Shown: in pieces, positions 10,425-40,953 of the stretch | How the letters are laid out: the number at the start of each line of letters is the position of its first letter | How positions within the stretch are numbered: the first letter of the stretch is position 1 | Assembly (NCBI RefSeq): GCF_016432865.1 | Contig: NC_067401.1 | Coordinates: 205,592,001 to 205,656,000 of the forward strand | Length of the DNA: 64,000 bases | Direction: 5' to 3' | Source: Antechinus flavipes | Lineage: Eukaryota | Notes under the pieces: generated by a model | Database searches by the model: none | What the model saw: only the letters and a program-made list of their open reading frames with translations | Told to the model about the DNA's origin: nothing | Position numbers and translations under genes: made by a program

Positions 10425-13400
10425 ATGGCAAAGCCCTGGCTGCTGCTTCTCCTGACCCTGGGAACCCCAGCTCTTCCCACAGGTGAGTCCCTCTCTCCCT
10501 GCTTGGTCTAGCCTTCTCTTTCCTGTCTTTCTGGGTTTTCCTCTGGCCTGATGCCCTCAGCATGGGTTGGGGATAGGAAATGGGACAACTGAACTCCTCT
10601 TCTAAGGTTCCTGTAGGAATCCTATAGGTCTCCTTTTTTCACTTAGTCTCTTTTCCTTGCCACCCTAGGTACCATGCTCTGCAGGAGAAGGCTCCCATGC
10701 TCTTGATCCTGAATACTAAAAGCAAACAGTTGAGAGTAGGGAGGTTTTAGATCCAGCCTGAAGTCACTCTATCATCTCTATCAATACCAGATTGATTGCC
10801 TATTACTTTTAAAACAAAAACCATCTTCTAAGCCTAGCATTCAAGGCTTTCAACTGTCTGGTCTTAACCTAACTTTCTTTATTTCACCTTTCTCCTTTTG
10901 ACACTATAATTCCAGCCAAACTGGACTACTATTCCCAATGTTCCTCCAAACTCCTCGTCTCTTCCTGCTCTGTGGGAAGTGAGTCTATTTGTGTCAGAAC
11001 ACATATACATAATACAAGAAAACAATAGAGACAAGGAAAAATTGAATTAGAGATGGTGTGATATAGATCCAAAAGTAAAAAGGAAGTCAACACAATGGAT
11101 AGAGGTCCATCACAGTCCAGGGGATTTGGGTTCAAATTTGACCTCAGATACTTACTAGTTGTGTGAACTTGGATGAGTCATTTAATACCACTTACCTCCA
11201 AAATTTTAATTAAAAAAAAAAAAGGGAGATCAGAGGAAAAAGAAATCAATATAGGCTAAAGTAATCTGGGAAGGCTTCATGGAAGGTGGTGGAGATAAAA
11301 TTAGTCTTGAATCTACAAATGGATAAGTGGTGAAGAATTCATAGACCTCTGTCTATGGCTTTATAAAACTGGAACCTAGAATATAAATGTCAAAGCACAG
11401 AATATAGAATATTGAGACTAGATGGGACCTTAGAACATGGAATGTGGGAGCACAGATTATTAAATGTAAGAACTGGGAAGAACTTTTGAGAGTATAGAGC
11501 CTGACTTTCCAAATTTAATAATAATAGTTAGCATTTTATTGAACTTAAAGATTTGCATAGGCCCTTAACTCATTTCTTTTGACCCTCACAAGAACTCTGC
11601 ACTATTATTATTATTCCCCTTTTACTAAGATTGAGAAAAGTTAAATGAATCACTGCTAATAAGTCTCTGAAATGGGACATGAACTCAGTCGGGTCTTTCA
11701 AGTCAATGCCATCTCACACATGTGTCCCTCTCCAGGTATGTGTACTGCTCCCTTCCCCTCCATGGCTCCCCCGCTCACCCAGGTGGTAGATGGGCAACAG
11801 AAGACGCTGGTGATCTGCTTGGTTCTTGACATCTCTCCTTCGTTTGCGGATGGTTCCATCTGGTTCTCATCTGGCAATGGCACCACCTTGGATGCCTTCA
11901 CTTATGGTCCCTCACCAGCTGGGGATGGTACCTGGAGCAGCCTGGCCCAGCTTTCCCTCCCTGCTGAGGAGCTGGCTTCCTGGGAGCCTCTGGTCTGCCA
12001 CACAGGGCCAGGCTGGCAGCCCCAGGGCCCAAGCACTCGTCCTCTTCAGCTATCTGGTATGGAAAACTAAGACCCTGTCTCGATGGAGCTTCTAGAGTTT
12101 AAGGCATTGTCAGATCCCTTATCTCCTGATACTTTCCCTCCTTTTGACCCCCTTCTTCCAAGAAACTCCACCGTCTGGGAAAGTGCCATTCTTCACTTTG
12201 GATAATTAGTTACAATTTCCAAGCTGAATGTATTTTAGATCAGCCAGAATTAATTTGCTATTTCACCTTAAGTCAGTTTTCTTCCGTGAACCTAATATGC
12301 CCCATCTGTCAGGTACAAAAAAATAATACCTAAAATGTCTTTTTCACAGAGCTGTTATCTTCATTAGACGACCTGTGAAAGTACTTGGGGAAAAAATTTT
12401 CAACACAGTATTATTGTGGGTGCAAGAGAGACTAAGGAAAATTCTTGAGAGAAAGGAGAACTGAGCAAGGGAATTCTCACTCACTGGGGTAATTTTGCCT
12501 CCAACAAACATTTATTATGTTTCAGGCCCCTCATCTATGGCATGTCTTACAGTGGCCTTGAGGAGCCAAAATGGCCTTGAGGCAATTTAATCTAGCTTCC
12601 CTTCCCCCATATTACAAATGAGAGAGCTGGGATATAGAAACGTTAAATAGTTTGTCTAAGGTCCCATGAATTTATGGAAGAGCAAAAATTTGAATCTAAG
12701 TTCTCTGACTCTAAATCCAAGGTACTTTCTCCAATATTATGCTCATGATACAAAGAAACATGGCAGAAGTCCCTGTCTATAAAGAGCTTAAAGATTAGCT
12801 GAATGCAAACTCTTTTTCTTTGGTTTTGGCAGGTGAGCCCAAGGCGGAAAAGTGCCAACAGGAGTTAACTACTGGTGAGTAATTGGATGGATGGTGAAAT
12901 CTGGAGGCCAGGCACCTGTGTCCTGTTGAAACTAAAGTGATTTGGGTGATAATAATCAGTCTCCTCATCAAAGGCAGTATGAGACTATGTTGACTCACTT
13001 GGTAACCCTGGGGTCAAGTACTGACCCCATCTGAGCTTCTTCACTTATCTCATCTGTATATAGTATTCCCTCTGGACACTCTCCTAACCTGACTTGAGGG
13101 CTGGCTGTCCAGAGATTGACTATTAACTAATTCAAGGTTCAAAAGAGTAATCTGTAGGGCTGCTCTATTACTAATATAACTAATGAATTTCAATCTGCAT
13201 GCTTCCCATCAATAGGCACTCAGTAGAAACAATTAACTCTTAGCAGAGGCCTTTATTCAGATTGAATATTAAGAATAGTACCTATGCAACATTTCCCATG
13301 TAGATCTGTAATACATTCTCCCTTAATCACACACAGGAACCTCAGGAAGAGTGAACTACATGAGTACACTGGTATTGAGGCACACTTAGGGGGGAGACAA

Positions 13401-14910
13401 CTTAAAATTCATGACACTTTGGGACCTGGAAATCCTTTTTCCTCTATAATTTTTTAGAGTTCTCAATGCTAGGCTCCCCAAATCTGATCTTCTCTATAGC
13501 CAGCTCTGTTCTCTGCTGCCAAAGAACCTTTTTCTTAGTTACTTTTCCCCTCTGTATCTATGTCTTTCTGGAGTGTGTGTCTTTGTTCCTTCAATTGTGC
13601 TTCATATTCTTCCAAACTGACCAACTTTTGACCTGCCAGATAAGCTATTTTCCTCTGAGCAAGTCACTATTAGATGCCATGACATTCCCTAATGGAGAGA
13701 AGAGGGAGGGATAGAGGACAGAGACCTGCATAGCACAGCCTCTTCACAAAATGTAACTGAACCTTGACTCCTTGGGAACTAAAGCTTTGTTCTTTAGCTC
13801 TTTAAAATCCCGCTTGTTCGATAAGGTTTGTCCCTTTAATTAATTCAAAGAAATATAGTTCGTATCCCAAAGGGAATATAGTATAGATACTTCTTTACCA
13901 GCTGCTTTAACACCTTGTAATTACATTCTGGGCGTTAGGAGTTAGGGTTGGATCAGAGAACAACTATCTTACATGTAAAATGGGAGGGAATCATTGATCA
14001 GAGTTTCTAAGCCTTCAAAGTCTTTGTTATTCAGTCATTTTTCAGTGGGGTCTACCTCTCTGTGACATCATTTGGAGTTTTCTTGGCAGAGATACTGCAG
14101 TAGTTTGCCACTTCCTTCTCCAGCTCCTTCTACAGATGGGGAAACTGAGATCAACAGGTTAAGTGACTTGCCAGGGTTACACAGCTAGTAAGTATATGAG
14201 GTTGGATTTGAACTCAGGGTCTTTCTAATTCTAGGCCTGGAACTCGGTCTCTATGCCACTTAATTGCTTGTCTTTACATGTTCTTATTAAATAAATTATT
14301 CTCCTGGTTCTACTCATTTCATTCTGTATCAATTTATACAAGTCTTCATAGATTTCTCTGAAACTGTCACTTTCATCTTTACAGCATAATAATATTCCAT
14401 TACATTCAACCAGTTCCAATATTGGGGTTATCCCATTCATTTATTGTTTTTTGCCACCAAAAAAAAGAGTTGCTTTAAATATTTTTGTATATTTCTTCTT
14501 TCTCAGAGCCTTTGGGTTCTGAGGATCACAACCACACACAGTAATGACCTTGGGGTTCATCCTAGGGGGATCAAGGATTTAATTCTTAGGATTACGGACC
14601 AACATGTAAAAATGGCTCTTTGTTGTATAGCTTAGTATTTGTATTGCTGGGTTAAAAGACATACACGGTTTAATCATTTGGGAAACATATTTCCCAAACT
14701 GCCTTGTCCCAGGCATCTCTTGACTTTTTGTTTCTTCCACCAGGACCACATGGTGTCTCTCAGACACTGATGCTAGGGGCCATTCGGCTGATCCTCTTCA
14801 AGCTGCTTATATTTGATGTGCTAATGACCTGCAGCCACCTTTGGGCTCTGAGGATCACAACCACACACAGTAATGATCTTGAGGTTCATCCTAAGGGATC
14901 AAGGATTTAA
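10425..14910 (+). CDS. PTCRA: Pre-T-cell receptor alpha chain, 195 aa
   Basis: Exons 10425-10482, 11736-12056, 12833-12874, 14744-14910, all phase-1 GT-AG. Leader MAKPWLLLLLTLGTPALPT. Ig domain PFPSMAPP...CLVLD...WFSSGNG...WEPLVCHTGPG. Connecting peptide with Cys (GEPKAEKC). TM LGAIRLILFKLLIFDVLMTCS with the conserved R and K. Confidence 0.97.
14295..14705 (-). mobile_element. Old antisense L1 ORF2-end fragment in PTCRA intron 3, interrupted by the 14509-14617 insert
   Basis: Both flanks of the insert (gttgctttaaatatttttgta... and ...gtattgctgggttaaaagacatacacggttt) align by eye to the reverse complement of L1 18420-18540. Confidence 0.7.
14509..14617 (+). repeat. Direct duplicate (copy A) of the PTCRA exon 4 cytoplasmic tail / proximal 3'UTR (copy B at 14838-14945)
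   Basis: 109 vs 108 bp, about 7 differences by manual alignment (~94% identity). Confidence 0.97.
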
Positions 14911-15865
14911 TTCTTAGGATTAAGGACCAACACGTAAAAATGGCTTTCTTCCTGCCTCCACTGTATGAAGATGTTAGTAGATCTTGATTGAACAAGAAAA
15001 GAATTTTGAGTCCTGTAGAGAGAGGCTGAAAGATGGGGATTCTGAGCATATGACTGCCCTATCTTTACCTTATGGGAATACAATGATAATATTTTCCGCA
15101 ATTCTTGGAATAACCTTCATTTCCAGCCACCAGACTACTCACTCCTTCTTGTAAAGTTCTATTCAGGATCAACATCCTCCATGAAACCTTCTTGAGTGAA
15201 ATTATAGGAGGTATTAAATGTTTCCCAACCTAATGAGCTCCTATATTTAGTTGTGTAAATGTATTCACTTTGACTACTTCTAGGCAGTCAAACCTGTAAT
15301 TTCTCTTACTTGAGAAGAAGCAATGTATGCCCCATCAGACTTCAAGGTTTCTGAGGTCAGGACCTAAGTCTTTTGCACTCCACTAGGAACACTCTCAAAC
15401 ATCAACTCTTAAGGAGTCCCCAGACACATATAGATGCATATAAAGTATACAAAATGGAATCAGGAGGTTAACCTCATACACAATGGAATATTGCATCCCT
15501 TGGGAGCTGTCAAGGAGTGAGAATGGAACTCAAAAAAATTCGGCAAGCCTTGACTCAGTGACAATGTTTTAAGATACTACCCCTGGCACTGGAGCAGGCA
15601 AGCAGAGCAGCCCAGGGATGGAGAAGAGGAGGCTTTGACATGGTACAAAGAGGATGTGACCAGAGTTGAGCAGGAGTTGCTCAAAATACAGGCAGAGTGC
15701 CCTACCCATTGTGCTGCTAGACAGAACTGGTGATTTCTACTCTCCCTTTCCATTCTCCCATTCTCTCAAGGGAGAGATGAACTTGCTTCTTAATTTGTTC
15801 TTCAGGATTTTGTATTGCTTTCCATTTTGCCATTTGTTTTGAAAAGAAAATCATTTCTCTGAGAT

Positions 15866-15871
15866 AATAAA
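15866..15871 (+). terminator. Likely PTCRA poly(A) signal
   Basis: First AATAAA seen after the stop codon, followed by a GT/T-rich tract (ggtttatatgtctgtgtcc). An ATTAAA at 15213 is an alternative. Confidence 0.5.
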
Positions 15872-18101
15872 TTCACTGAATTATTGGTTTATATGTCTGT
15901 GTCCTTGGGGTAAATGAAACCCAGAAGTAGCATTGGATGATGAGATATACAGGGAAAGGGATAGATCTTATTATGACTAGAAAATTTCTGGCAAAACTGG
16001 GGACAGAATGAATGAAAGAGGTTTTATTGATTTATATTTTTATACTTTCCCCCAAACAAAGGATCCAGACCAATACCTCGACACATATGAGTCAGCAATC
16101 CTAGTGAAGTGAGTTATATAATTGAGCTGAACTAACCTTTTTAAAGGATATAACCTCAAACACCTCATTCTTGTTTGGGCTTTTTAAAATTTTATTTTTT
16201 ACAGATTTGAAAGCAAAACCATTCTCCCAGGAGCAGAGTCGAAAGTCTTAACTAGAGAGAAATTTACCCTAGAAAGTCCTGGGAAAGAATGACAATACCC
16301 AAATAATGGTGGGAAGGGAGCAGTCCAAAGGGAATAACAAAGAGACAAACAAAAGAAAAACTGATATTATGCTTCTTTATTAACAGAGACTTGATCATTT
16401 AATATCAGACTTTTGCTAAATTACATAAGGAAAGTATATATTGTACCTCTCTTCTCAATAGTGAAAAGAACATTAAATTTGGAGCCGGAAGACCTTGGTT
16501 CAAACCCTTATACTATTATTTACATCCTGTCTGATCTTGGTCTAGCCCCTTAACCTTTGAAACTTGAATCCTTCATCTGTATTTTTAAAAGGAGGGAGGG
16601 GAGTGGGTTAGATGACCTCCAAGGTCCCTTCCAGTTCTAAATCTGTCATCAGATGTTTTCTACAAAGACTTCTTACAAGAGAGATTTCCCGAGCTGCTGG
16701 AATGAAAGGAAAAATATGAATGAGAGTCAGCACAGATAAAGGAGATATTTTTAAAAGCTGGTCTCTTTGACTAGCAGATCGGATCTCTAAAAGCCCCATC
16801 AGGCTCTGGAACTCTATGTTCTATGGCTTAGCTTGTATTAGGCAGAGGTGGAAAGTTCCAGATGAAGAATAGAGCCTAGAGAAGTGCTTTTGGGAAGCGT
16901 CAGAGAAAAGGGAGTAAGGAATCCTTGAGAGCTCAGTTTCCTCCTTTGTAAAATGATATTGGATTAGTAGATGGTCTGCTAGCTCTGGCACTGTGCAGAG
17001 AAAGGAGAAAAAATAGCAAGAAGGAATGTTGGAACAGAGGAACAGAGAATCGATCCCCCTGGATATTTTAAATGAGCATGGTACTGAGCCAAAGCCTTGT
17101 GTAGACTTGATGGGAAGTTTTCAAAGGAAGCTGATTGGGGAATGAGGTCATCCCATATTCAGCTGTGTTTCCCTTTAGGATGTCTCAATATTGAAATGCC
17201 AAATTAAGTTAACTATCCACTCTATGAAGGTTATTCACATTACCAAAGAGAATTGTTGAATTTACAATGGTCCAGAGTGTTCTAGTGCCTCTAAGTTAAC
17301 AACTGAGCAGTTAGGAAGGGAAAGGAAACCTTAAAGCCACAAAGCTGAAAACTACTCTTCACTAAAGAATATCAGACTTATGGCTGAAAACCTTGAGAGG
17401 TCAAATAGCCCAACTGCTTCTTTTTACAGCTGAGAAAGCAGAGGCCCAGAGAGGATTGAAGTGGCTTGTCCAGAATAACACAGATATAACAGAACTATGA
17501 TTTTATTCAGGCCCTTTTGATTACAAATACAGGCCTCTTTCTGCTGCACCATTACGATCTTATTAATCAGGATGAATGAATATATTCTCTAAGGCCAGAA
17601 TATAAGATTAGTGGTTGGGGAATGTGTATAAAGGGAGAGAAGTAGAGAGGAATATAACTTGACTTCAAAAAAATTCCTCTAAGCAGCATCAGGAGAACAT
17701 TGTAACAGAAATATTGTAACAATGACCAACTGGGAAAGATTTAGTTATTCTGAATCAACACAATGATCCACAATTCCAAAGGATTCATGACACTGTCTAC
17801 TTCCAGGGACAGAACTAGAAATCTAGGTGCGGGATGAAGCATATTTTCTTTTTCTTTATTTTTCTTGGTTTTTTCTTTTTCACAACATGGCTAATATGGA
17901 AACATGTTTTGCATGATTTTATATGTATAATGAGTATCATATCTTTTTCCTTCTCAATGGGTGGAAAGGGGCTAAAGGGAAGGTAGAAATTAAGAACTGA
18001 AAATAATTTTTTAATTAAAAAAAGAGAGGAAATTCTCATAACCTTGGGAACTCACTTCCTTCCTCATGTGAGGCATGGTTAAAAAGCAAAAGCAGTTCTC
18101 A

Positions 18102-19168
18102 ACTGACTCAAATTTATAAAAAAATCAAGCCATTCTCCAATTGATAAATGGTCAAAGGATATGAACAGACAATTTTCAGATGAAGAAATTGAAACTATTA
18201 CCACTCACATGAAAGAGTGTTCCAAATCACTATTGATCAGAGAAATGCAAATTAAGACAACTCTGAGATATCACTACACACCTGTCAGATTGGCTAAGAT
18301 GACAGGAAAAAATAATGATGAATGTTGGAGGGGATGCGGGAAAACGGGGACACTGATGCATTGTTGGTGGAGTTGTGAACGAATCCAGCCATTCTGGAGA
18401 GCGATCTGGAATTATGCCCAAAAAGTTATCAAACTGTGCATACCCTTTGATCCAGCAGTGTTTCTATTGGGCTTATACCCCAAAGAGATACTAAAAAAGG
18501 GAAGGGGACCTGTATGTGCCAAAATGTTTGTAGCAGCCCTGTTTGTAGTGGCTAGAAACTGGAAAATGAATGGATGCCCATCAATTGGAGAATGGCTGGG
18601 TAAATTGTGGTATATGAATGTTATGGAATATTATTGCTCTGTAAGGAATGACCAGCAGGATGAATACAGAGAGGCTTGGAGAGACCTACATGGACTGATG
18701 CTGAGTGAGATGAGCAGAACCAGGAGATCATTATACACTTCGACAACGATATTGTGTGAGGATGTATTCTGATGGAAGTGGATTTCTCTGACAAAGAGAC
18801 TTAACTGAGTTTCATTGGAGAAATGATGGACAGAAACAGCTACACCCAAAGAAGGAATACTGGGAAATGAATGTGAACTATTTGCATTTTTTATTTTCTT
18901 CCCGAGTTATTTTTACCTTCTGAATCCAATTCTCCCTGTGCAACAAGAGAACTGTTCGGTTCTGCAAATATGTATTGTATCTAGATATACTGCAACATAT
19001 TTAACATATCTAGGACTGCTTGCCATCCTGGGGGGGGGGGGAGGAGGGAGGGAGGGGAAAAAACGAAACATAAGTGATTGCAAGGGATAATGTCGTGTAA
19101 AAATTATCCTGGCATGGATTCTGTCAACACAAAGTTATTATTAAATAAAATAAAATTTAAAAAAAAAA
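18102..19168 (+). mobile_element. Young 5'-truncated L1 (open ORF2 C-terminus, 3'UTR, poly-A)
   Basis: 14-bp TSD AAAAGCAGTTCTCA at 18088-18101 and 19169-19182. Uninterrupted 203-aa ORF 18161-18772 with the CWRGCG...HCWW and PFD motifs of L1 ORF2. G-run in the 3'UTR and an A-tail. Confidence 0.97.
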
Positions 19169-35259: not shown

Positions 35260-37905
35260 CCTTGTGAGTGTATGTCCTTATGTGGATCGGGTGAGTGTAA
35301 TTTGAAGTGCAAACCTTGGGAGGTCTTATTTCCCGTAGCTGGCTCCTGTTGCTCTTTATCATTTTATATTGGTACTCTCTGTTTAACCCTTTCAACCCCA
35401 CCATTCAAAGATAAGGTTTGTATTCCTCTTACCAACTGACAGTAGAAGTATTCTGAAAGGCCTGACAGTGCTGATCAAGATTGCTGAAGTCCCAATGGCA
35501 GAAGTGGTCAGAGCTACTCATTTGTGGTGGGAGCTAATGCCAGCTTCCAGACTTTTAGCGCTCTTCAGAATTAGAGAACTGGGTCTCAAGTGAATCCTGA
35601 GTAAATATGAACAAAAGGTTGGGGAATAGGAAAAGTGAGTAAGTGAGGAACTTGGGTTGAGGCTAGAGAGCAAAGATAAGAGTACGAAGTCATGACTACT
35701 GAGTAGCAGCCCAGAAAGAAGGCCAAAATCAAGACCAGCAGTAGCAAGACGGAGAAAAAGCCAAAGTAAGATATGAAAGGCCCGATTGGCACTGTGACTG
35801 GGGGCTTCCCGTTCAGGTGTGGGCTGGATTAGATGGTCGTGGAGATCCCACTAACTCTGAGATGCTATGATTTTGTGGTCCCTGCAGCTTCAATATAAAA
35901 ATGTCTGTCACTGATACCTTCAGGAATTGAGAAGGGCAGGTGGGCAGATACTCTTATGTTTCTTCTTAGGGCATGTCTGAGACTTTTGAAACACTCCACA
36001 ATCTAGTTCACAAGGGGGTGAAGGTAGTGATGGACATTCCCTATGAACTGTGGAATGAAACTTCGGCTGAGGTAGCTGACCTCAAGAAGCAGGTATGTGT
36101 CTGGGGAATTCCCCCACCTGTTCTTAGTGTCATTCCCTTCTCCTCTTTACATTTTCATAGAGGATTTTGTTTGGATTTCTCCTTTTCCCATTTCACTACC
36201 TACTTATTTGTGCATGGTTCCTCCACTCCCTTCAATTTATCTCCCCAAAAACCTAGCACGGTGCACGGTACAGAGAACTAAAATAGTGTTTGTGGAATCA
36301 GCAAGATAGCACAGCACAGATAGTGCCTGGGAGATGAATTAGGTGTGTGTTGTCGGGGAAAGACAGAATATGAGTTCCCAAATCCCAAGGCCCCTTCTTG
36401 CCACTTGTACCATTTTAGTCTTTTGTCAGCAAAGACAGATCAGGAATGGGGGTTCATGTTGATCAGAAGCACAAGCTGCCACCAGAGAATCCAAGTGGAG
36501 TTGGCAGTGATAATGGTTTGTCAGTATCCCTTCCTGGGGCTCTCAGATAAGCCTTTATAAATATGATATAAAATTCTTATAATGAAGAAACTGGGCTAGC
36601 TGATTTCTGAAAGGACCCTTGCAGCTGTGACATTCTACATTCTGTGTATCTGTGCCTCTGTTGGGTTCTGCTTTAGTGTGATGTGCTGGTGGAGGAATTC
36701 GAAGAAGTGATTGAGGACTGGTATCGGAACCATCAGGAAGAGGACCTAACCTCTTTTCTCTGCGCCAATCATGTGCTAAAGGGGAAAGACACAAGTGAGT
36801 CTGAGATTGGGGGCGGGGCAGGGGGCCTCAGGTCACTTACCCCTGCTGGAATGCCTAGATTTGGTGAACACTGGGAAAATAGGGATGGGGTGGGGATCTC
36901 AGATGACAGAGATCTTGTCCTTGGAGAGCCTGGATTATTTGGAGAGGCTGTAGCTCCACACAGCTTTGAAAAAGATTCAGAATATTTACAAAGTAGATAC
37001 CAGATGAGTTTAATGTGGTCCAGGCAAAGCATGTGTATCTAGGCCATTAGGTCATGGGCATCAGAGGCAGAGGTCTGTGTTGAAACCATCAGAGCTCCCC
37101 CCAGACCTGGTCACAGCTGTCTCCTCAGGGCTCTAGCCCCCTCAGGACCATGTGACACTTACTCTCTACACTGCCTCAACCCATTTTACTGTATAATGTG
37201 CAGAGTAAAAAATATTTAATCTTTTTACTCAGTATCCTAACCCTCTTCTTTTTATTCAGTATATGTTGTGTTCCACATATTAGTCCATCACCTCCCAGGG
37301 ATGAGGTCAGTAGCACCATGAGGATCATGCTTTGAAATAACACTCTTAAATCATGCTTGATCAGATTTATCACCAAAGTGATATTTTCCCTGTTTCATAC
37401 TTAAAGAATCAGGTTTAGAGACATTAAGTAAATTGACCAGAGTCACACAGCTAATGAACAGGCCAGGATTGGAACCTACTTCTCTTCTGACTACAAATGC
37501 CTGTTTACTTAATGAATATAAGGCTGTTCCTTATATCCCTATCCTGCTCCCTTTCCTTAGCATCCTCTCCCAAACCTTATTACAGTAGGCTCAGGCCAGT
37601 GGTTGATGCCCAGCAGGTACTTGGCAGATGACCATTTCTAGTTGTTGCTGCTTGAGCATTGTGTCCCTTCCCCTCTCCCCTCACCAGGTTGCCTGACTGA
37701 GCAATGGATCAGCAAGAAGGGAGATACAGCAGCCTTGGGAGGGAAGAAAGCCAAGAAAAAGGGGGGCAAAAGCAAGGCGTCCAATAAGAAGAACAGCAAG
37801 CAAAGGAAAGACCCAAGAAACCTAGATGAGGATCCTCATCCCGAGGAGGATGAGGGTGTCCAGAAAGCCACCCCTCTCACACACAGCCCCACCGATGAAC
37901 TGTAG
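30051..37905 (+). CDS. CNPY3: Canopy FGF signalling regulator 3 (PRAT4A, TLR-specific gp96 co-chaperone)
   Basis: Exons 30051-30216, 34504-34627, 35058-35154, 35970-36092, 36677-36794, 37688-37905. Motifs [75 protein letters not shown]-terminus ...PTDEL. Confidence 0.98.
35198..35256. repeat. (GAGT)n followed by (TG)20 microsatellite in CNPY3 intron 3
   Basis: Seen directly. Confidence 0.95.
37100..37247 (+). repeat. Diverged intronic copy of the CNPY3 distal 3'UTR (partner at 38337-38485)
   Basis: About 78% identity over ~149 aligned positions by hand, mostly transitions; perfect 23-bp core aatgtgcagagtaaaaaatattt. Confidence 0.9.
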
Positions 37906-38441
37906 AATCCAACTGAGCACCCCATCTACTGTCCCAGGGGTGCAGAAGGAAGCCCTTGGCTGAGGGAGACTCTGTCTTCTCGTGCCTCTGGCAGACAAGG
38001 ATGGACTCCCCAGCTCTGGGGGTTCACTGCACCCCCTGCTGTGCCCTTGTCCCGCTGAGGATTACAGAGCCTGCCCTTCCTTTTCCTTTCCTGGCAGCCG
38101 CTTCTCCCCTGGGCTTGGAAGAAGAGCTGTGTGGCGGCCCCAGAGCTAAAAACTGCATTATAAACCTTCAAGGGATGAGTCTGAGCATTGCCGAGCCCTC
38201 AGGGAGGACTCTATCCCTCATTGTCCCATGGGTGCACCCCTACCTTCTTCCAGTGGGAGTGGTTCAGCAACACCACTCCCCAGTTTCAGAAACACCTCTC
38301 TCCTGGCCCCAGTCTTACCAGGAAGGCCTTCCTCATCCCAGTCCTGGTTGAGGCCGTTTTCTCCAGGGCCCTAGCCCCCTTGCAGCCATGTGACACCCAG
38401 CCTCTACTCCTCCCCATCCCATTTTACTGCACAATGTGCAG

Positions 38442-38447
38442 AGTAAA
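38442..38447 (+). terminator. Probable CNPY3 poly(A) signal (AGTAAA variant)
   Basis: No AATAAA found between the stop codon and the GNMT promoter. AGTAAA is followed by U/GU-rich ttttacttggtgt...tttttttgtg. Confidence 0.45.
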
Positions 38448-40953
38448 AAATATTTGGCCTTTTTACTTGGTGTCCTAACCCCCTTTTTTTGTGCCTCTCA
38501 ACTGGCTTTTCTCCCATTCTTCTACCCAGAATTCATGGGAATTGACATAAGGATGGTGTAAAGGTTAATGAACCCTTTTTGGTCCTTGATTTCCCATTTA
38601 TTCTGGGGAACTCTTGCAAGCTGATCTGGAAGAGCAATAGCAAAGAGAGAATCCTGGTGGGGATATTGTGCGTGGAGGGAGTGGGAAGGGGAAGGAAAGG
38701 TAGAGAATGCTAAACGGAAGTACAGGGGAGGAGAGGACTGGTAGTAGGATGGAGGTTGTCCTTCACATCAGCCCCTACCCTGATATATCGAGCCTTGAAA
38801 AGAGACTGCAAGGACGGTTTTTAAACATCCTATTCTAGAATAACAGTCAAAAGGACATCTGTCCTTGTTCCCACTTGATTTTCTGGAGTCCTTTCCTTTT
38901 CTGTTCTTGAATTTGAGTCTTCCCCACCCCCAAGCAGCAGGCTTCCTTTTCCCTTTTCTCCTTTCTGCCTAATCACCTCTATTGGGTACCTTTCAGCAGG
39001 CTGTTCACCCCTGTCCTGTCTCTTCCCTCCTCCCTCCTTTGTGATTCCAGGTTTTGTGTAATGTATTTACTGTTTTCCCTTTTCAGGGCTGCCCCTTGTC
39101 ATTGAACTTTGTTCCCCAGTTTTTTCCTCTCTTCGTATCACGTAGGACTTCCTCTCTTCCTCCTCCCCCTACCCCAGCCAACACCTGCTCATTTCATGAT
39201 GTCCTCTGAAGTTAGAGGGTAATGAGGCCTTTTTTGTCCCTCCCTGCTAGTCCTGAAGGCAACCTGGAGCAGCCGGGCCCAGAGCCTGCAACACCTGGCA
39301 CTAACGGTGCAGGGTACAGTTAGCGTGGGACTGGTTTGATTTCTTCTCCCACATCTCCCTATTGAAAAGGAAGAAGCCATCTTGCTGAACTCCCCCTAAG
39401 GCTACTCCCTTAAATTTAGTGTTGAAAATGACCCTGTTTTTCCTGACCACCCAGCCTAAGTCCAGGCCCACTGGCCAACAAATGGGCCAACTAAGAGGCC
39501 TCTAGCTCTGGTGGAGTGGTTTGTGAACTTGTAAGTCCCACAGTCTTGCCCCTCCTCCCCTTTGCGGAGGAGTTAAGGCAGGCTTTTCCTTGAGAAATGC
39601 AAACTTTTTATCTTCTCTGGTTGACAGCCCTCCTGCTGTGGATTGAAGGAAAAGCAGAGACTGACTCTTGGAGATTACTTCTGTCAAAGACCTGCCCTTA
39701 CTCTCCTTATGTTTGGTGGGACCCAATTGATTCAATTTTCCCATGGAAATTCAATGCTCAGGGCTGACATTTGGAACAGAATTAGGAGTGGGGTAGAGAG
39801 AAGACACCCACAGTGTAAGTGGGTCACATCTTTGCTTCTCAATCTGTTTCCCAATGTCTGACACTTTTCCTCTCAAAAGTTTCACTAAACAGGACTATCC
39901 AACAGAGAGAGAGTTCATCTCTTTACCCAGGATTTATTTCATCGATTTCTTAGGCAGAGGTTTGGCCTCTTTCTGGGGTGGCAGCTAGGCTGTCCAATTG
40001 TGTGTCGCTAGGACTTCTGCTCCGCGCTGACCCTGAGCCTCTCCCCTCCACAGCTAGCCTATCACTATGTTCTTTTTGGTGTTTGAGCAGGCAGGAGCCC
40101 TTCCTCCTCTCCCTTGTGTTTAACATGCTCTGACCCCTGCCCTGCCTCCCCTCCACATCCTGGGATCTTGGGAGGACCTGGGTACACTGGTTTACCCCCC
40201 TTGCCCACTAAGCATTGAGTATCCCCCCCTCACCCCCACCCCCACCTGCAACACCCTGTTTTATATCCCACTCTTACCAGATTAAAAAAAAAAATTGAAG
40301 CCAGCTCCAAGTTCAATGTTCTAAAGATAATAAGCTGGTTTTATGCCAAACCTCCCCACACACATACCACCTCAAACCCAGCTCACCCTATGGACCCGGC
40401 TCCCTTGGGCCAGCTCACCAGTGCCCTGGAGAAGGCAGAAGCTAGGAGCTGTCTATGCTAGACATAGAAGGAATTGGTATAATTACTTTTTATAAGTGCA
40501 TCCTATGGGGGGGAAGAGTTATGAGGTAGGATGTTGTGACCTGATGCATCAGTCTTCCCCCCCCCCCCAATCCCTTGTCTGCGTTCCTGCTACTTCGGGC
40601 CTGGTGCCCAAGTGGACACTCATGAAAGGCTTAAGGTTACCCCCTGAAGCAGTCTCGCTGAGCCCTTGGAGTTACTCGTTTGCCCTTTCTCATCCTACCC
40701 TTGGCTCCCAGAAGCTCGGGATGCTTCTTTCCCCTGGATGCCAGGATGGGGCTGGAGGGGAGATCTCCCACATGACACGTTTCTCTCTAGCTAAGGGTTG
40801 GGAGGTGGGGTAGAAGAAGGCCATTCACAGAGCCTGGGAGGTCAGGAACTGCGGGTTCCTGGCTCTGGGAGAAGAGCAGGCAGGGGCGTGTCCTGGATCT
40901 CACCTGCCATTGGACAGGTTAGGCAGGCTGGGCAAAAAAAGCCGGGGCAGCCT

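What the first reader, a model, noticed from the sequence alone, without database searches (positions are those of the whole stretch)
14480..14945. PTCRA intron 3 holds a copy of the gene's own tail behind a new splice acceptor: possible soluble pre-TCR-alpha
Seen: 14509-14617 is a ~94%-identical copy of 14838-14945 (cytoplasmic tail plus start of the 3'UTR). It is embedded inside an old antisense L1 fragment, with no poly-A or TSD visible. Immediately upstream is a pyrimidine tract plus AG (atttcttctttctcAG, 14505-14506). Splicing exon 3 (phase 1) to 14507 reads EPLGSEDHNHTQ-stop (14544). The product would be 152 aa: leader, Ig domain and the TCR-beta-linking Cys, but no TM helix. No strong donor was seen before exon 4, so this would be an extended last exon and should escape NMD. 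Inference: a secreted or decoy pTalpha, or a way to dampen pre-TCR output. The insertion looks like a templated repair patch.
Basis: partly seen in the sequence, partly recalled or inferred. Interest (0 to 1): 0.7.

Follow-up and report, generated by a model that had tools for sequence, protein, structure and literature searches.

The report
Unspliced repair-scar copy in PTCRA intron
A 109-base copy of the end of the pre-T-cell-receptor alpha gene really does sit in the gene's last intron behind a splice-acceptor-like site, but the RNA assemblies available show only normal splicing, so it is most likely an old, harmless DNA-repair scar and not the source of a soluble receptor chain.

Summary
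Window 14509-14617 is a 109-nt direct copy of 14838-14945, the end of the PTCRA coding sequence plus 35 nt of 3'UTR. The copies differ by 6 mismatches and 1 indel (E 1e-42), and there is no third copy. The copy interrupts an antisense L1 fragment; removing it restores L1 colinearity. The junctions carry microhomology: about 6-8 nt on the left, 2 nt on the right. There is no poly-A. Genome contigs of two relatives about 1-1.5% diverged carry it with both junctions, so it is neither an artefact nor recent.

The acceptor, however, is L1's own antisense sequence. It has no branch-point motif, and sites with equal or better simple metrics occur about every 2 kb.

Transcript contigs from the same organism (X7) and a relative about 6% diverged (X1) join exon 3 only to the normal exon 4 (14744). 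Neither has any contig over 14601-14742, which the proposed extended exon must cover. Contigs cannot exclude a rare isoform.

Verdict: an ordinary templated-insertion scar. The soluble pre-TCR-alpha idea is unsupported. The scan noted similar scars elsewhere in this genome (CNPY3, B4GALNT4, C4).

The parts
14509..14617 (+). Copy A: the derived 109-nt templated insertion in PTCRA intron 3
   Evidence: 93.6% identical to 14838-14945. It interrupts an otherwise colinear L1 fragment. It is present with both junctions in DNA contigs of organisms D and E, which lack the extra G at 14565.
14838..14945 (+). Copy B: the source segment in exon 4, comprising the last 24 codons, the stop at 14908-14910 and 35 nt of 3'UTR
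   Evidence: The reading frame continues from the TM region. The bilby PTCRA tail has the same length and frame. The segment lies within spliced transcript contigs of X7 and X1.
14231..14508 (-). Antisense L1 fragment (ORF2 C-terminal part), left of the insertion
   Evidence: The minus-strand translation matches the L1 ORF2 C-terminus at 18161-18769 (E 2e-9), which itself matches human L1 ORF2p residues 1076-1265 (E 3e-63). DNA depth here is very high in the relatives.
14618..14700 (-). Antisense L1 fragment, continuation to the right of the insertion
   Evidence: The alignment to two other L1 copies of the window runs across the junction once 14509-14617 is removed; scores rise from 77 to 103 and from 85 to 103.
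14487..14506 (+). Acceptor-like pyrimidine tract plus AG, contributed by the L1 antisense strand and not by the insertion
   Evidence: 15 of 18 pyrimidines, a pyrimidine run of 13, and C at -3. No branch-point motif in -50..-10. On the + strand of the window, 34 AGs score equal or better. The L1 relative at 18 kb has a similar ttttttag at the same place.
14542..14544 (+). Stop codon of the hypothetical exon 3 -> 14507 reading frame
14718..14743 (+). The canonical exon-4 acceptor, with a consensus branch-point motif TCTTGAC (14718-14724)
   Evidence: The junction is used in transcript contigs of X7 and X1.
10425..10482 (+). PTCRA exon 1 coding part (leader)
   Evidence: ATG and a GT donor. The exon 1-exon 2 joint, GT..AG, is seen in X1 record 1.
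11736..12056 (+). PTCRA exon 2 (Ig-like domain)
   Evidence: Pfam PF15028 PTCRA, E 2.9e-61. 91% identical to bilby and 87% to wombat PTCRA.
12833..12874 (+). PTCRA exon 3 (connecting peptide EPKAEKCQQELTT, containing the Cys)
   Evidence: It forms the 42-nt middle piece of X7 record 17.
14744..15890 (+). PTCRA exon 4: TM helix, short tail, stop at 14908-14910, and a 3'UTR with AATAAA at 15866-15871
   Evidence: Transcript contigs cover 14743-15875.

Best explanation
This is a neutral, old templated insertion, a replication or repair scar. A break or stalled fork inside an antisense L1 fragment in PTCRA intron 3 was repaired by copying about 108 nt from the same chromosome 329 nt downstream, within exon 4. 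Copying was primed at the microhomology (C)CTTTGGG, and the strand returned to the L1 at CT/CTTTG. The patch happens to lie directly behind an acceptor-like pyrimidine tract plus AG that belongs to the L1 antisense strand. That site is not detectably used: PTCRA pre-mRNA is spliced from exon 3 to the normal exon 4, and the patch is removed with the intron. Shown here: the copy, its derived status, its presence in three organisms, and canonical splicing in two. Inferred: the template-switch mechanism, DNA as the template (not RNA), and neutrality.
For: Removing 14509-14617 restores colinearity with two other L1 copies. At the left junction, L1 relatives read CTCTTTGGGG immediately after the break and the source begins CCTTTGGG. 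At the right junction, CT is shared. There is no poly-A. Copy B is ancestral: the bilby tail has the same length and frame, and at 14894 and 14933 the outgroup transcript X1 carries copy A's state. The unit is low-copy, since DNA depth over 14601-14974 is about single-copy in X8 and X10, whereas the L1 and SINE bins reach 10^4-10^5. Copy A is present in organisms D and E with both junctions (X10 records 13 and 14, X8 record 29). For RNA, X7 record 17 is exon 2 (177) + exon 3 (42) + exon 4 (160) = 379 nt, and X1 record 7 joins exon 3 to 14743/4 at depth 440. In both runs the depth in bin 14601-14787 equals exactly the share from exon 4, so there is nothing over 14601-14742. X1 does show an intron-2-retaining contig at depth 33, so transcripts at roughly 8-10% of the main form can appear. 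The acceptor lacks a branch-point motif, and comparable AGs occur at 0.53 per kb. Intronic transposon splice signals are abundant but rarely reach mRNA (abstract of PMC10901741).
Against: By simple metrics the acceptor looks as good as the gene's real acceptors. Only assembled contigs were available, not raw reads, and contigs drop rare variants. PTCRA depth in the same-species run is low (6-9). The tissue and developmental stage of the runs are unknown. It is unknown whether organism A (X1) carries the patch at all. The patch is longer than typical Pol-theta templated insertions, which are generally under 25 bp (PMC12426944). It is direct and 329 nt from its template, unlike the inverted, within-100-bp class defined in PMC8421209. 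The exact repair pathway is therefore not established.
Confidence: 0.85

Rival explanations
1. The L1-derived acceptor at 14505-14506 is used at a low level or in a stage-specific way as an alternative 3' splice site. This would give an extended last exon and a 152-aa pre-TCR-alpha that keeps the leader, the Ig domain and the connecting-peptide Cys but lacks the TM helix. Such a product could be splicing noise or a functional decoy or dampener.
For: The AG, a pyrimidine tract with 15 of 18 Y, C at -3 and a 37-nt AG-free zone are comparable to the gene's real acceptors. The frame, the stop at 14542-14544 and the absence of a downstream donor are confirmed, so the stop would lie in the last exon. 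Antisense L1 splice sites are known to be functional in mouse (PMC2176070). Contigs cannot exclude rare isoforms.
Against: There is no contig over 14601-14742 in either transcript run, although the canonical junction is assembled in both, and a roughly 8-10% intron-2-retention form is visible in X1. No branch-point motif is present, and such sites are common. The acceptor predates and is independent of the patch. No database protein of 58-185 aa is a near-identical PTCRA, so no 152-aa isoform turned up; this is a weak negative. Only isoforms A and B are described for human and mouse PTCRA (PMC10958617). From domain knowledge: without the charged TM residues the chain could not assemble with CD3, and its partner TCR-beta stays membrane-bound, so free secretion is unlikely.
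Confidence: 0.1
2. The patch was copied from PTCRA RNA instead of DNA, either by RNA-templated break repair or by an aborted, endonuclease-independent L1-type insertion of a transcript fragment.
For: The copied segment lies wholly within one exon, so RNA and DNA templates cannot be told apart from the sequence. The insertion is in direct (sense) orientation.
Against: There is no poly-A tail, and the copy does not reach the transcript's 3' end, stopping about 945 nt before it. The flanking CTTTG repeat is explained by microhomology with the source and is not a target-site duplication. PTCRA is a thymocyte gene (established knowledge), so germ-line transcripts to serve as template are not expected. 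The DNA template is only 329 nt away in cis.
Confidence: 0.07
3. Both copies are fragments of an interspersed repeat, or the copy is an assembly artefact.
For: The region is repeat-rich, with L1 and a very high-copy SINE-like element at 14040-14226.
Against: There is no third copy in the window. DNA depth over both copies is about single-copy in two genomes. Independent contigs of two other organisms cross both junctions. Copy B is coding sequence shared with bilby.
Confidence: 0.01

Closest known systems
Templated insertions from microhomology-mediated template switching (MMBIR/FoSTeS-type, MMB-TI; PMC8421209)
   Same: The inserted sequence is copied from a nearby template in cis and flanked by microhomology. 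It carries no poly-A or target-site duplication, and it interrupts otherwise colinear sequence.
   Different: As defined in that work, the class is short, inverted and templated within 100 bp. This patch is 108 nt, direct, and templated 329 nt away.
Polymerase-theta (TMEJ/MMEJ) templated insertions (PMC12426944)
   Same: Break repair that copies flanking sequence after minimal base pairing and then re-anneals.
   Different: Those insertions are generally under 25 bp. This one is about four times longer, with longer microhomology at its left junction.
Exonization of antisense L1 sequences (PMC2176070)
   Same: The candidate acceptor lies on the antisense strand of an intronic L1, the configuration known to provide functional splice sites in mouse.
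   Different: No inclusion in mRNA was seen here. The would-be exon body is not L1 but a patch of the host gene.
Known PTCRA isoforms pT-alpha-a and pT-alpha-b (Saint-Ruf 1998, as cited in PMC10958617)
   Same: Alternative splicing of PTCRA does exist in human and mouse.
   Different: The known variant skips exon 2 (the Ig domain) and keeps the TM. No TM-less natural isoform was found in the literature searched.

Membership tests
PTCRA (pre-T-cell antigen receptor alpha, Pfam PF15028) | Ig-like ectodomain matching PF15028 above the gathering score | tested here: met
   Exon 2 translation: E 2.9e-61, 205 bits against a cut-off of 23.1. 91% identical to bilby PTCRA.
PTCRA (pre-T-cell antigen receptor alpha, Pfam PF15028) | Connecting-peptide Cys, a TM helix with basic residues, and CNPY3 downstream | tested here: met
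   EPKAEKCQQELTT. TLMLGAIRLILFKLLIFDVLMT, with R and K. CNPY3 lies downstream according to the scan's note, and the synteny rule is given in PMC9614664. The CNPY3 identity itself was not tested here.
Templated insertion / template-switch repair scar | The insert matches a template nearby in cis and is the derived state | tested here: met
   Outgroup states and the bilby tail show that exon 4 is the source.
Templated insertion / template-switch repair scar | Microhomology at both junctions; no poly-A, no target-site duplication | tested here: met
   Left: about 6-8 nt (CTTTGGG), inferred from two L1 relatives. Right: CT. No A-run. The ancestral L1 sequence at the break is inferred, not observed.
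Polymerase-theta templated insertion (TMEJ) | Small size (generally under 25 bp), with the template in the immediate flank | tested here: not met
   108 nt, with the template 329 nt away, against the description in PMC12426944.
Alternative 3' splice site / alternative terminal exon | AG preceded by a pyrimidine tract | tested here: met
   Not distinctive, however: equal or better sites occur at 0.53 per kb.
Alternative 3' splice site / alternative terminal exon | A recognisable branch point 15-45 nt upstream | tested here: inconclusive
   Neither YNYURAY nor yUnAy is present in -50..-10. The true exon-3 acceptor also lacks one by this crude test.
Alternative 3' splice site / alternative terminal exon | Junction present in transcripts | tested here: not met
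   Only the canonical exon 3-exon 4 join is seen in X7 and X1, with zero contig depth over 14601-14742. Contigs only; raw reads were not available.
Processed retrocopy / L1-mediated transduction of an mRNA fragment | 3' end of the transcript with poly-A, plus target-site duplications | tested here: not met
   The copy ends about 945 nt before the poly(A) signal and has no A-tail.

The most novel reading that the evidence does not exclude
In thymocytes of a particular stage, for example in pouch young, the L1-derived acceptor is used often enough to produce a TM-less pre-TCR-alpha. This chain would pair with TCR-beta through the connecting-peptide Cys but could not recruit CD3, so it would act as a lineage-specific dampener of beta-selection. 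The patch would supply the short in-frame ORF and stop that make the product stable and NMD-resistant.
Probability: 0.03. Interest if true: 0.55.

Novelty: new member of a known kind. Interest (0 to 1): 0.15.

Why it matters
As it stands this matters little. It is one more germ-line templated-insertion scar, of a type the scan has met repeatedly in this genome. It is useful mainly as a well-resolved example, with the source, the target, the microhomologies and a minimum age all readable. It is 108 nt long, direct, and 329 nt from its template, so it lies outside the size and orientation ranges on which Pol-theta and MMB-TI detection tools focus. A genome-wide census of such patches in marsupials could say something about which repair pathway makes them. 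If the acceptor were used after all, this would be the first natural TM-less pre-TCR-alpha. The present RNA evidence points the other way.

Tried and rejected
1. From memory of the human L1 sequence I first took the L1 fragment for sense-oriented. That was wrong.

2. Pfam gave nothing for the L1 ORF2 C-terminal ORF; the PDB sequence search identified it.

3. MAFFT with the insert left in aligned the L1 copies poorly. A pairwise alignment with the insert removed was decisive.

4. A tandem duplication of a 329-nt unit was rejected, because only the first 108 nt of the two periods are alike.

5. A TE origin for both copies and an assembly artefact were both rejected.

6. Fetching the bilby PTCRA locus to date the patch failed: no DNA was served because the file is too large. 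The wombat hit has no contig on record.

7. No run on record as RNA was found. X7 and X1 were recognised as transcript assemblies only from their exon-only, GT..AG-joined contigs.

8. MaxEntScan and SpliceAI are not available, so transparent tract metrics were used instead.

9. The joined (spliced) protein models, 195 aa and 152 aa, were not sent to any search or fold tool. Searches were done exon by exon by reference. Reading frames and lengths across exons were computed in a script that printed only the terminal peptides.

Full report
**Observation.**
- The window holds two direct copies 329 nt apart: 14509-14617 (109 nt, copy A) and 14838-14945 (108 nt, copy B). They differ by six mismatches and one single-base indel.
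- Within the 64-kb window the match has a blastn E-value of 1e-42, and neither copy has a third relative.
- The tract tatttcttctttctcAG ends at 14505-14506, directly before copy A.

**Gene and exons.**
- Exon 2 (11736-12056) matches Pfam PF15028 (PTCRA) with E 2.9e-61. It is 91% identical to bilby and 87% identical to wombat PTCRA.
- All four coding exons have GT/AG borders, and all introns are in phase 1: 10425-10482, 11736-12056, 12833-12874 and 14744-14910. Together they make 195 codons plus the stop.
- Exon 3 encodes EPKAEKCQQELTT, with the connecting-peptide Cys.
- Exon 4 encodes the TM helix, with its Arg and Lys, and a 24-residue tail.
- AATAAA lies at 15866-15871.
- Copy B covers the last 24 codons, the stop and 35 nt of 3'UTR.

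- Joining 12874 to 14507 gives ...TT-EPLGSEDHNHTQ-stop (TAA at 14542-14544) and a 152-aa product.
- In that frame copy A is read one base out of register with the real tail, so none of the tail's peptide is carried over.
- No GT between 14507 and 14743 matches more than 6 of 9 donor positions. Use of the site would therefore make an extended last exon.

**Which copy is the original.**
- Copy A sits inside a fragment of the 3' part of L1 ORF2, in antisense orientation.
  - An intact 203-aa ORF at 18161-18769 (+) matches human L1 ORF2p residues 1076-1265 (E 3e-63).
  - The minus-strand translation of 14234-14440 matches that ORF (E 2e-9).
- I first judged the fragment to be sense-oriented from memory.
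- With 14509-14617 removed, the intron aligns to two other L1 copies of the window straight across the junction. Scores rise from 77 to 103 and from 85 to 103.
- The bilby PTCRA tail has the same length and frame as the window's exon-4 tail.
- At two of the six mismatches (14894 and 14933), the transcript of a relative about 6% diverged (X1) carries copy A's base. Those two changes therefore happened in exon 4 after the copying.
- Copy A is thus the derived copy, a snapshot of an older exon 4.

**Junctions and likely mechanism.**
- Left junction: L1 ...CTCAGAG | CCTTTGGG.... The two L1 relatives read CTCTTTGGGG or CTCTTTGTGA immediately after the break, and the source segment begins CCTTTGGG. 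That gives about 6-8 nt of microhomology.
- Right junction: the patch ends ...GGCT and the L1 resumes CTTTGTTG. L1 relatives read tCTCTTTG, so CT is shared.
- There is no A-tail. The apparent flanking repeat of CTTTG is what a template switch followed by a return to the point of departure would leave.
- The best-fitting mechanism is a replication- or repair-associated template switch (MMBIR/FoSTeS-like, or synthesis-dependent repair). It would use the DNA 329 nt downstream as template.
- The patch is longer than Pol-theta insertions, which are generally under 25 bp (PMC12426944). Unlike the MMB-TI class as operationally defined, it is neither inverted nor within 100 bp of its template (PMC8421209).
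- An RNA template cannot be excluded from the sequence. It is less likely because PTCRA is a thymocyte gene (established knowledge) and the copy does not reach the transcript's 3' end.

**Presence in other genomes.**
- No run was on record as RNA.
- Genome contigs of organisms D (X8) and E (X10), about 1.1-1.4% diverged over the introns, carry copy A.
  - X10 record 13 crosses the left junction (14463-14551).
  - X10 record 14 and X8 record 29 cross the right junction and continue into exon 4.
  - Both organisms lack the extra G at 14565, so the indel is private to the window's organism.
- DNA depth over 14601-14974 is about single-copy, whereas the L1 and SINE bins reach 10^4-10^5. The unit is therefore not an interspersed repeat.
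- The patch predates the split of these three organisms.
- Copy A shows four substitutions in 108 nt, against roughly 2.9% per lineage between the window and organism A. This suggests an age of that order, but the counts are too small to say more.

**Is the acceptor used?**
- X7, from the same organism as the window (0-3 differences per contig), and X1 (organism A) both consist of exon-only contigs with GT..AG joints. They are therefore transcript assemblies.
- X7 record 17 (379 nt) is exactly exon 2 (177) + exon 3 (42) + exon 4 (160).
- X1 record 7 joins exon 3 to 14743/4 at depth 440, and X1 record 1 joins exons 1 and 2.
- In both runs the depth of bin 14601-14787 equals exactly the share from exon 4 (45/187 x 9.19 = 2.21; 45/187 x 440.6 = 106). 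No contig covers 14601-14742, which an exon extended from 14507 must contain.
- X1 does contain an intron-2-retaining contig at depth 33. Forms at roughly 8-10% of the main transcript can therefore be assembled.
- Limits of this evidence:
  - These are contigs, which drop rare variants.
  - X7 depth on the coding exons is only 6-9.
  - Tissue and stage are unknown.
  - It is unknown whether organism A carries the patch.

**How good is the acceptor?**
- By transparent metrics it matches the gene's true acceptors: 15 of 18 pyrimidines, a run of 13, C at -3, and 37 nt without an upstream AG.
- However, 34 AGs on the window's + strand are equal or better (0.53 per kb), including one more in intron 3 (13457).
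- It has no branch-point-like motif, whereas the exon-4 acceptor has a consensus TCTTGAC at 14718.
- The tract and the AG belong to the L1 antisense strand. The L1 copy at 18 kb has ttttttag at the same place.
- So the acceptor was not created by the patch and must exist in very many L1 copies.
- Antisense L1 splice sites can be functional (PMC2176070). Intronic transposon signals are abundant and rarely reach mRNA (PMC10901741 abstract).

**Databases and literature.**
- A word search with exon 2, restricted by design to proteins of 58-185 aa, found no near-identical PTCRA and so no 152-aa isoform. This is a weak negative, since the species may not be represented.
- Only isoforms A and B, the latter skipping exon 2, are described for human and mouse (PMC10958617). 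Searches for a natural soluble form found none.
- From domain knowledge: a TM-less chain could not bind CD3, and its partner TCR-beta remains membrane-bound. 'Secreted' is therefore the less likely fate even if the isoform existed.

**Context.** The same window has a second case in the neighbouring gene: 37126-37252 against 38364-38490, about 80-85% identical (note s1-189104). The scan noted others in this genome (s1-192119, judged an ordinary repair scar by its follow-up; s1-189124). These notes are unchecked leads, but they fit the reading that such patches are a routine mutational class here.

**Verdict.** The soluble or decoy pre-TCR-alpha reading is unsupported by the RNA evidence available and is improbable, though rare use is not excluded. 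This is an ordinary feature of low interest.

Noticed in passing
window 37126-37252 and 38364-38490: A second intragenic direct copy in the neighbouring gene (CNPY3 according to the scan's note): 127 nt at about 80-85% identity, 1238 nt apart, including an AGTAAAAAATATTT stretch near the gene's 3' end. It looks like an older event of the same kind as the PTCRA patch.
   Followed up: partly
window 18161-18772 (+): An open 203-aa ORF that is the C-terminal part of L1 ORF2p (E 3e-63 to human ORF2p residues 1076-1265). This is a comparatively young L1 copy; Pfam has no model that hits this part.
   Followed up: partly
window 14040-14226 and 11048-11234: A very high-copy interspersed repeat (SINE-like). 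Summed contig depth is 3-4 x 10^5 and 3 x 10^4 in the two whole-genome runs, with many chimeric joints between the two places. The two form the 26-nt inverted repeat I1 neighbourhood.
   Followed up: no
window 12029-12473: In the transcript run X1, a contig continues from exon 2 into intron 2 at about 8-10% of the depth of the spliced contig. This indicates retention of intron 2, or pre-mRNA.
   Followed up: no
window 15083-15762 (3'UTR): The PTCRA 3'UTR of organism A differs from the window by several indels: an 18-nt insertion behind 15588, a 10-nt deletion at 15762 and a 4-nt insertion behind 15083. The 3'UTR therefore evolves freely.
   Followed up: no
window 14933: The C here, which creates a CpG, is private to the window's organism. 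Organisms A, D and E, and copy A, all have T.
   Followed up: yes
window 14509-14945: The two direct copies bracket the canonical exon-4 acceptor and the whole TM-coding segment. Recombination between them would delete both and place the L1 acceptor in front of the tail. No such allele was seen in the four runs, and the idea is speculative.
   Followed up: no
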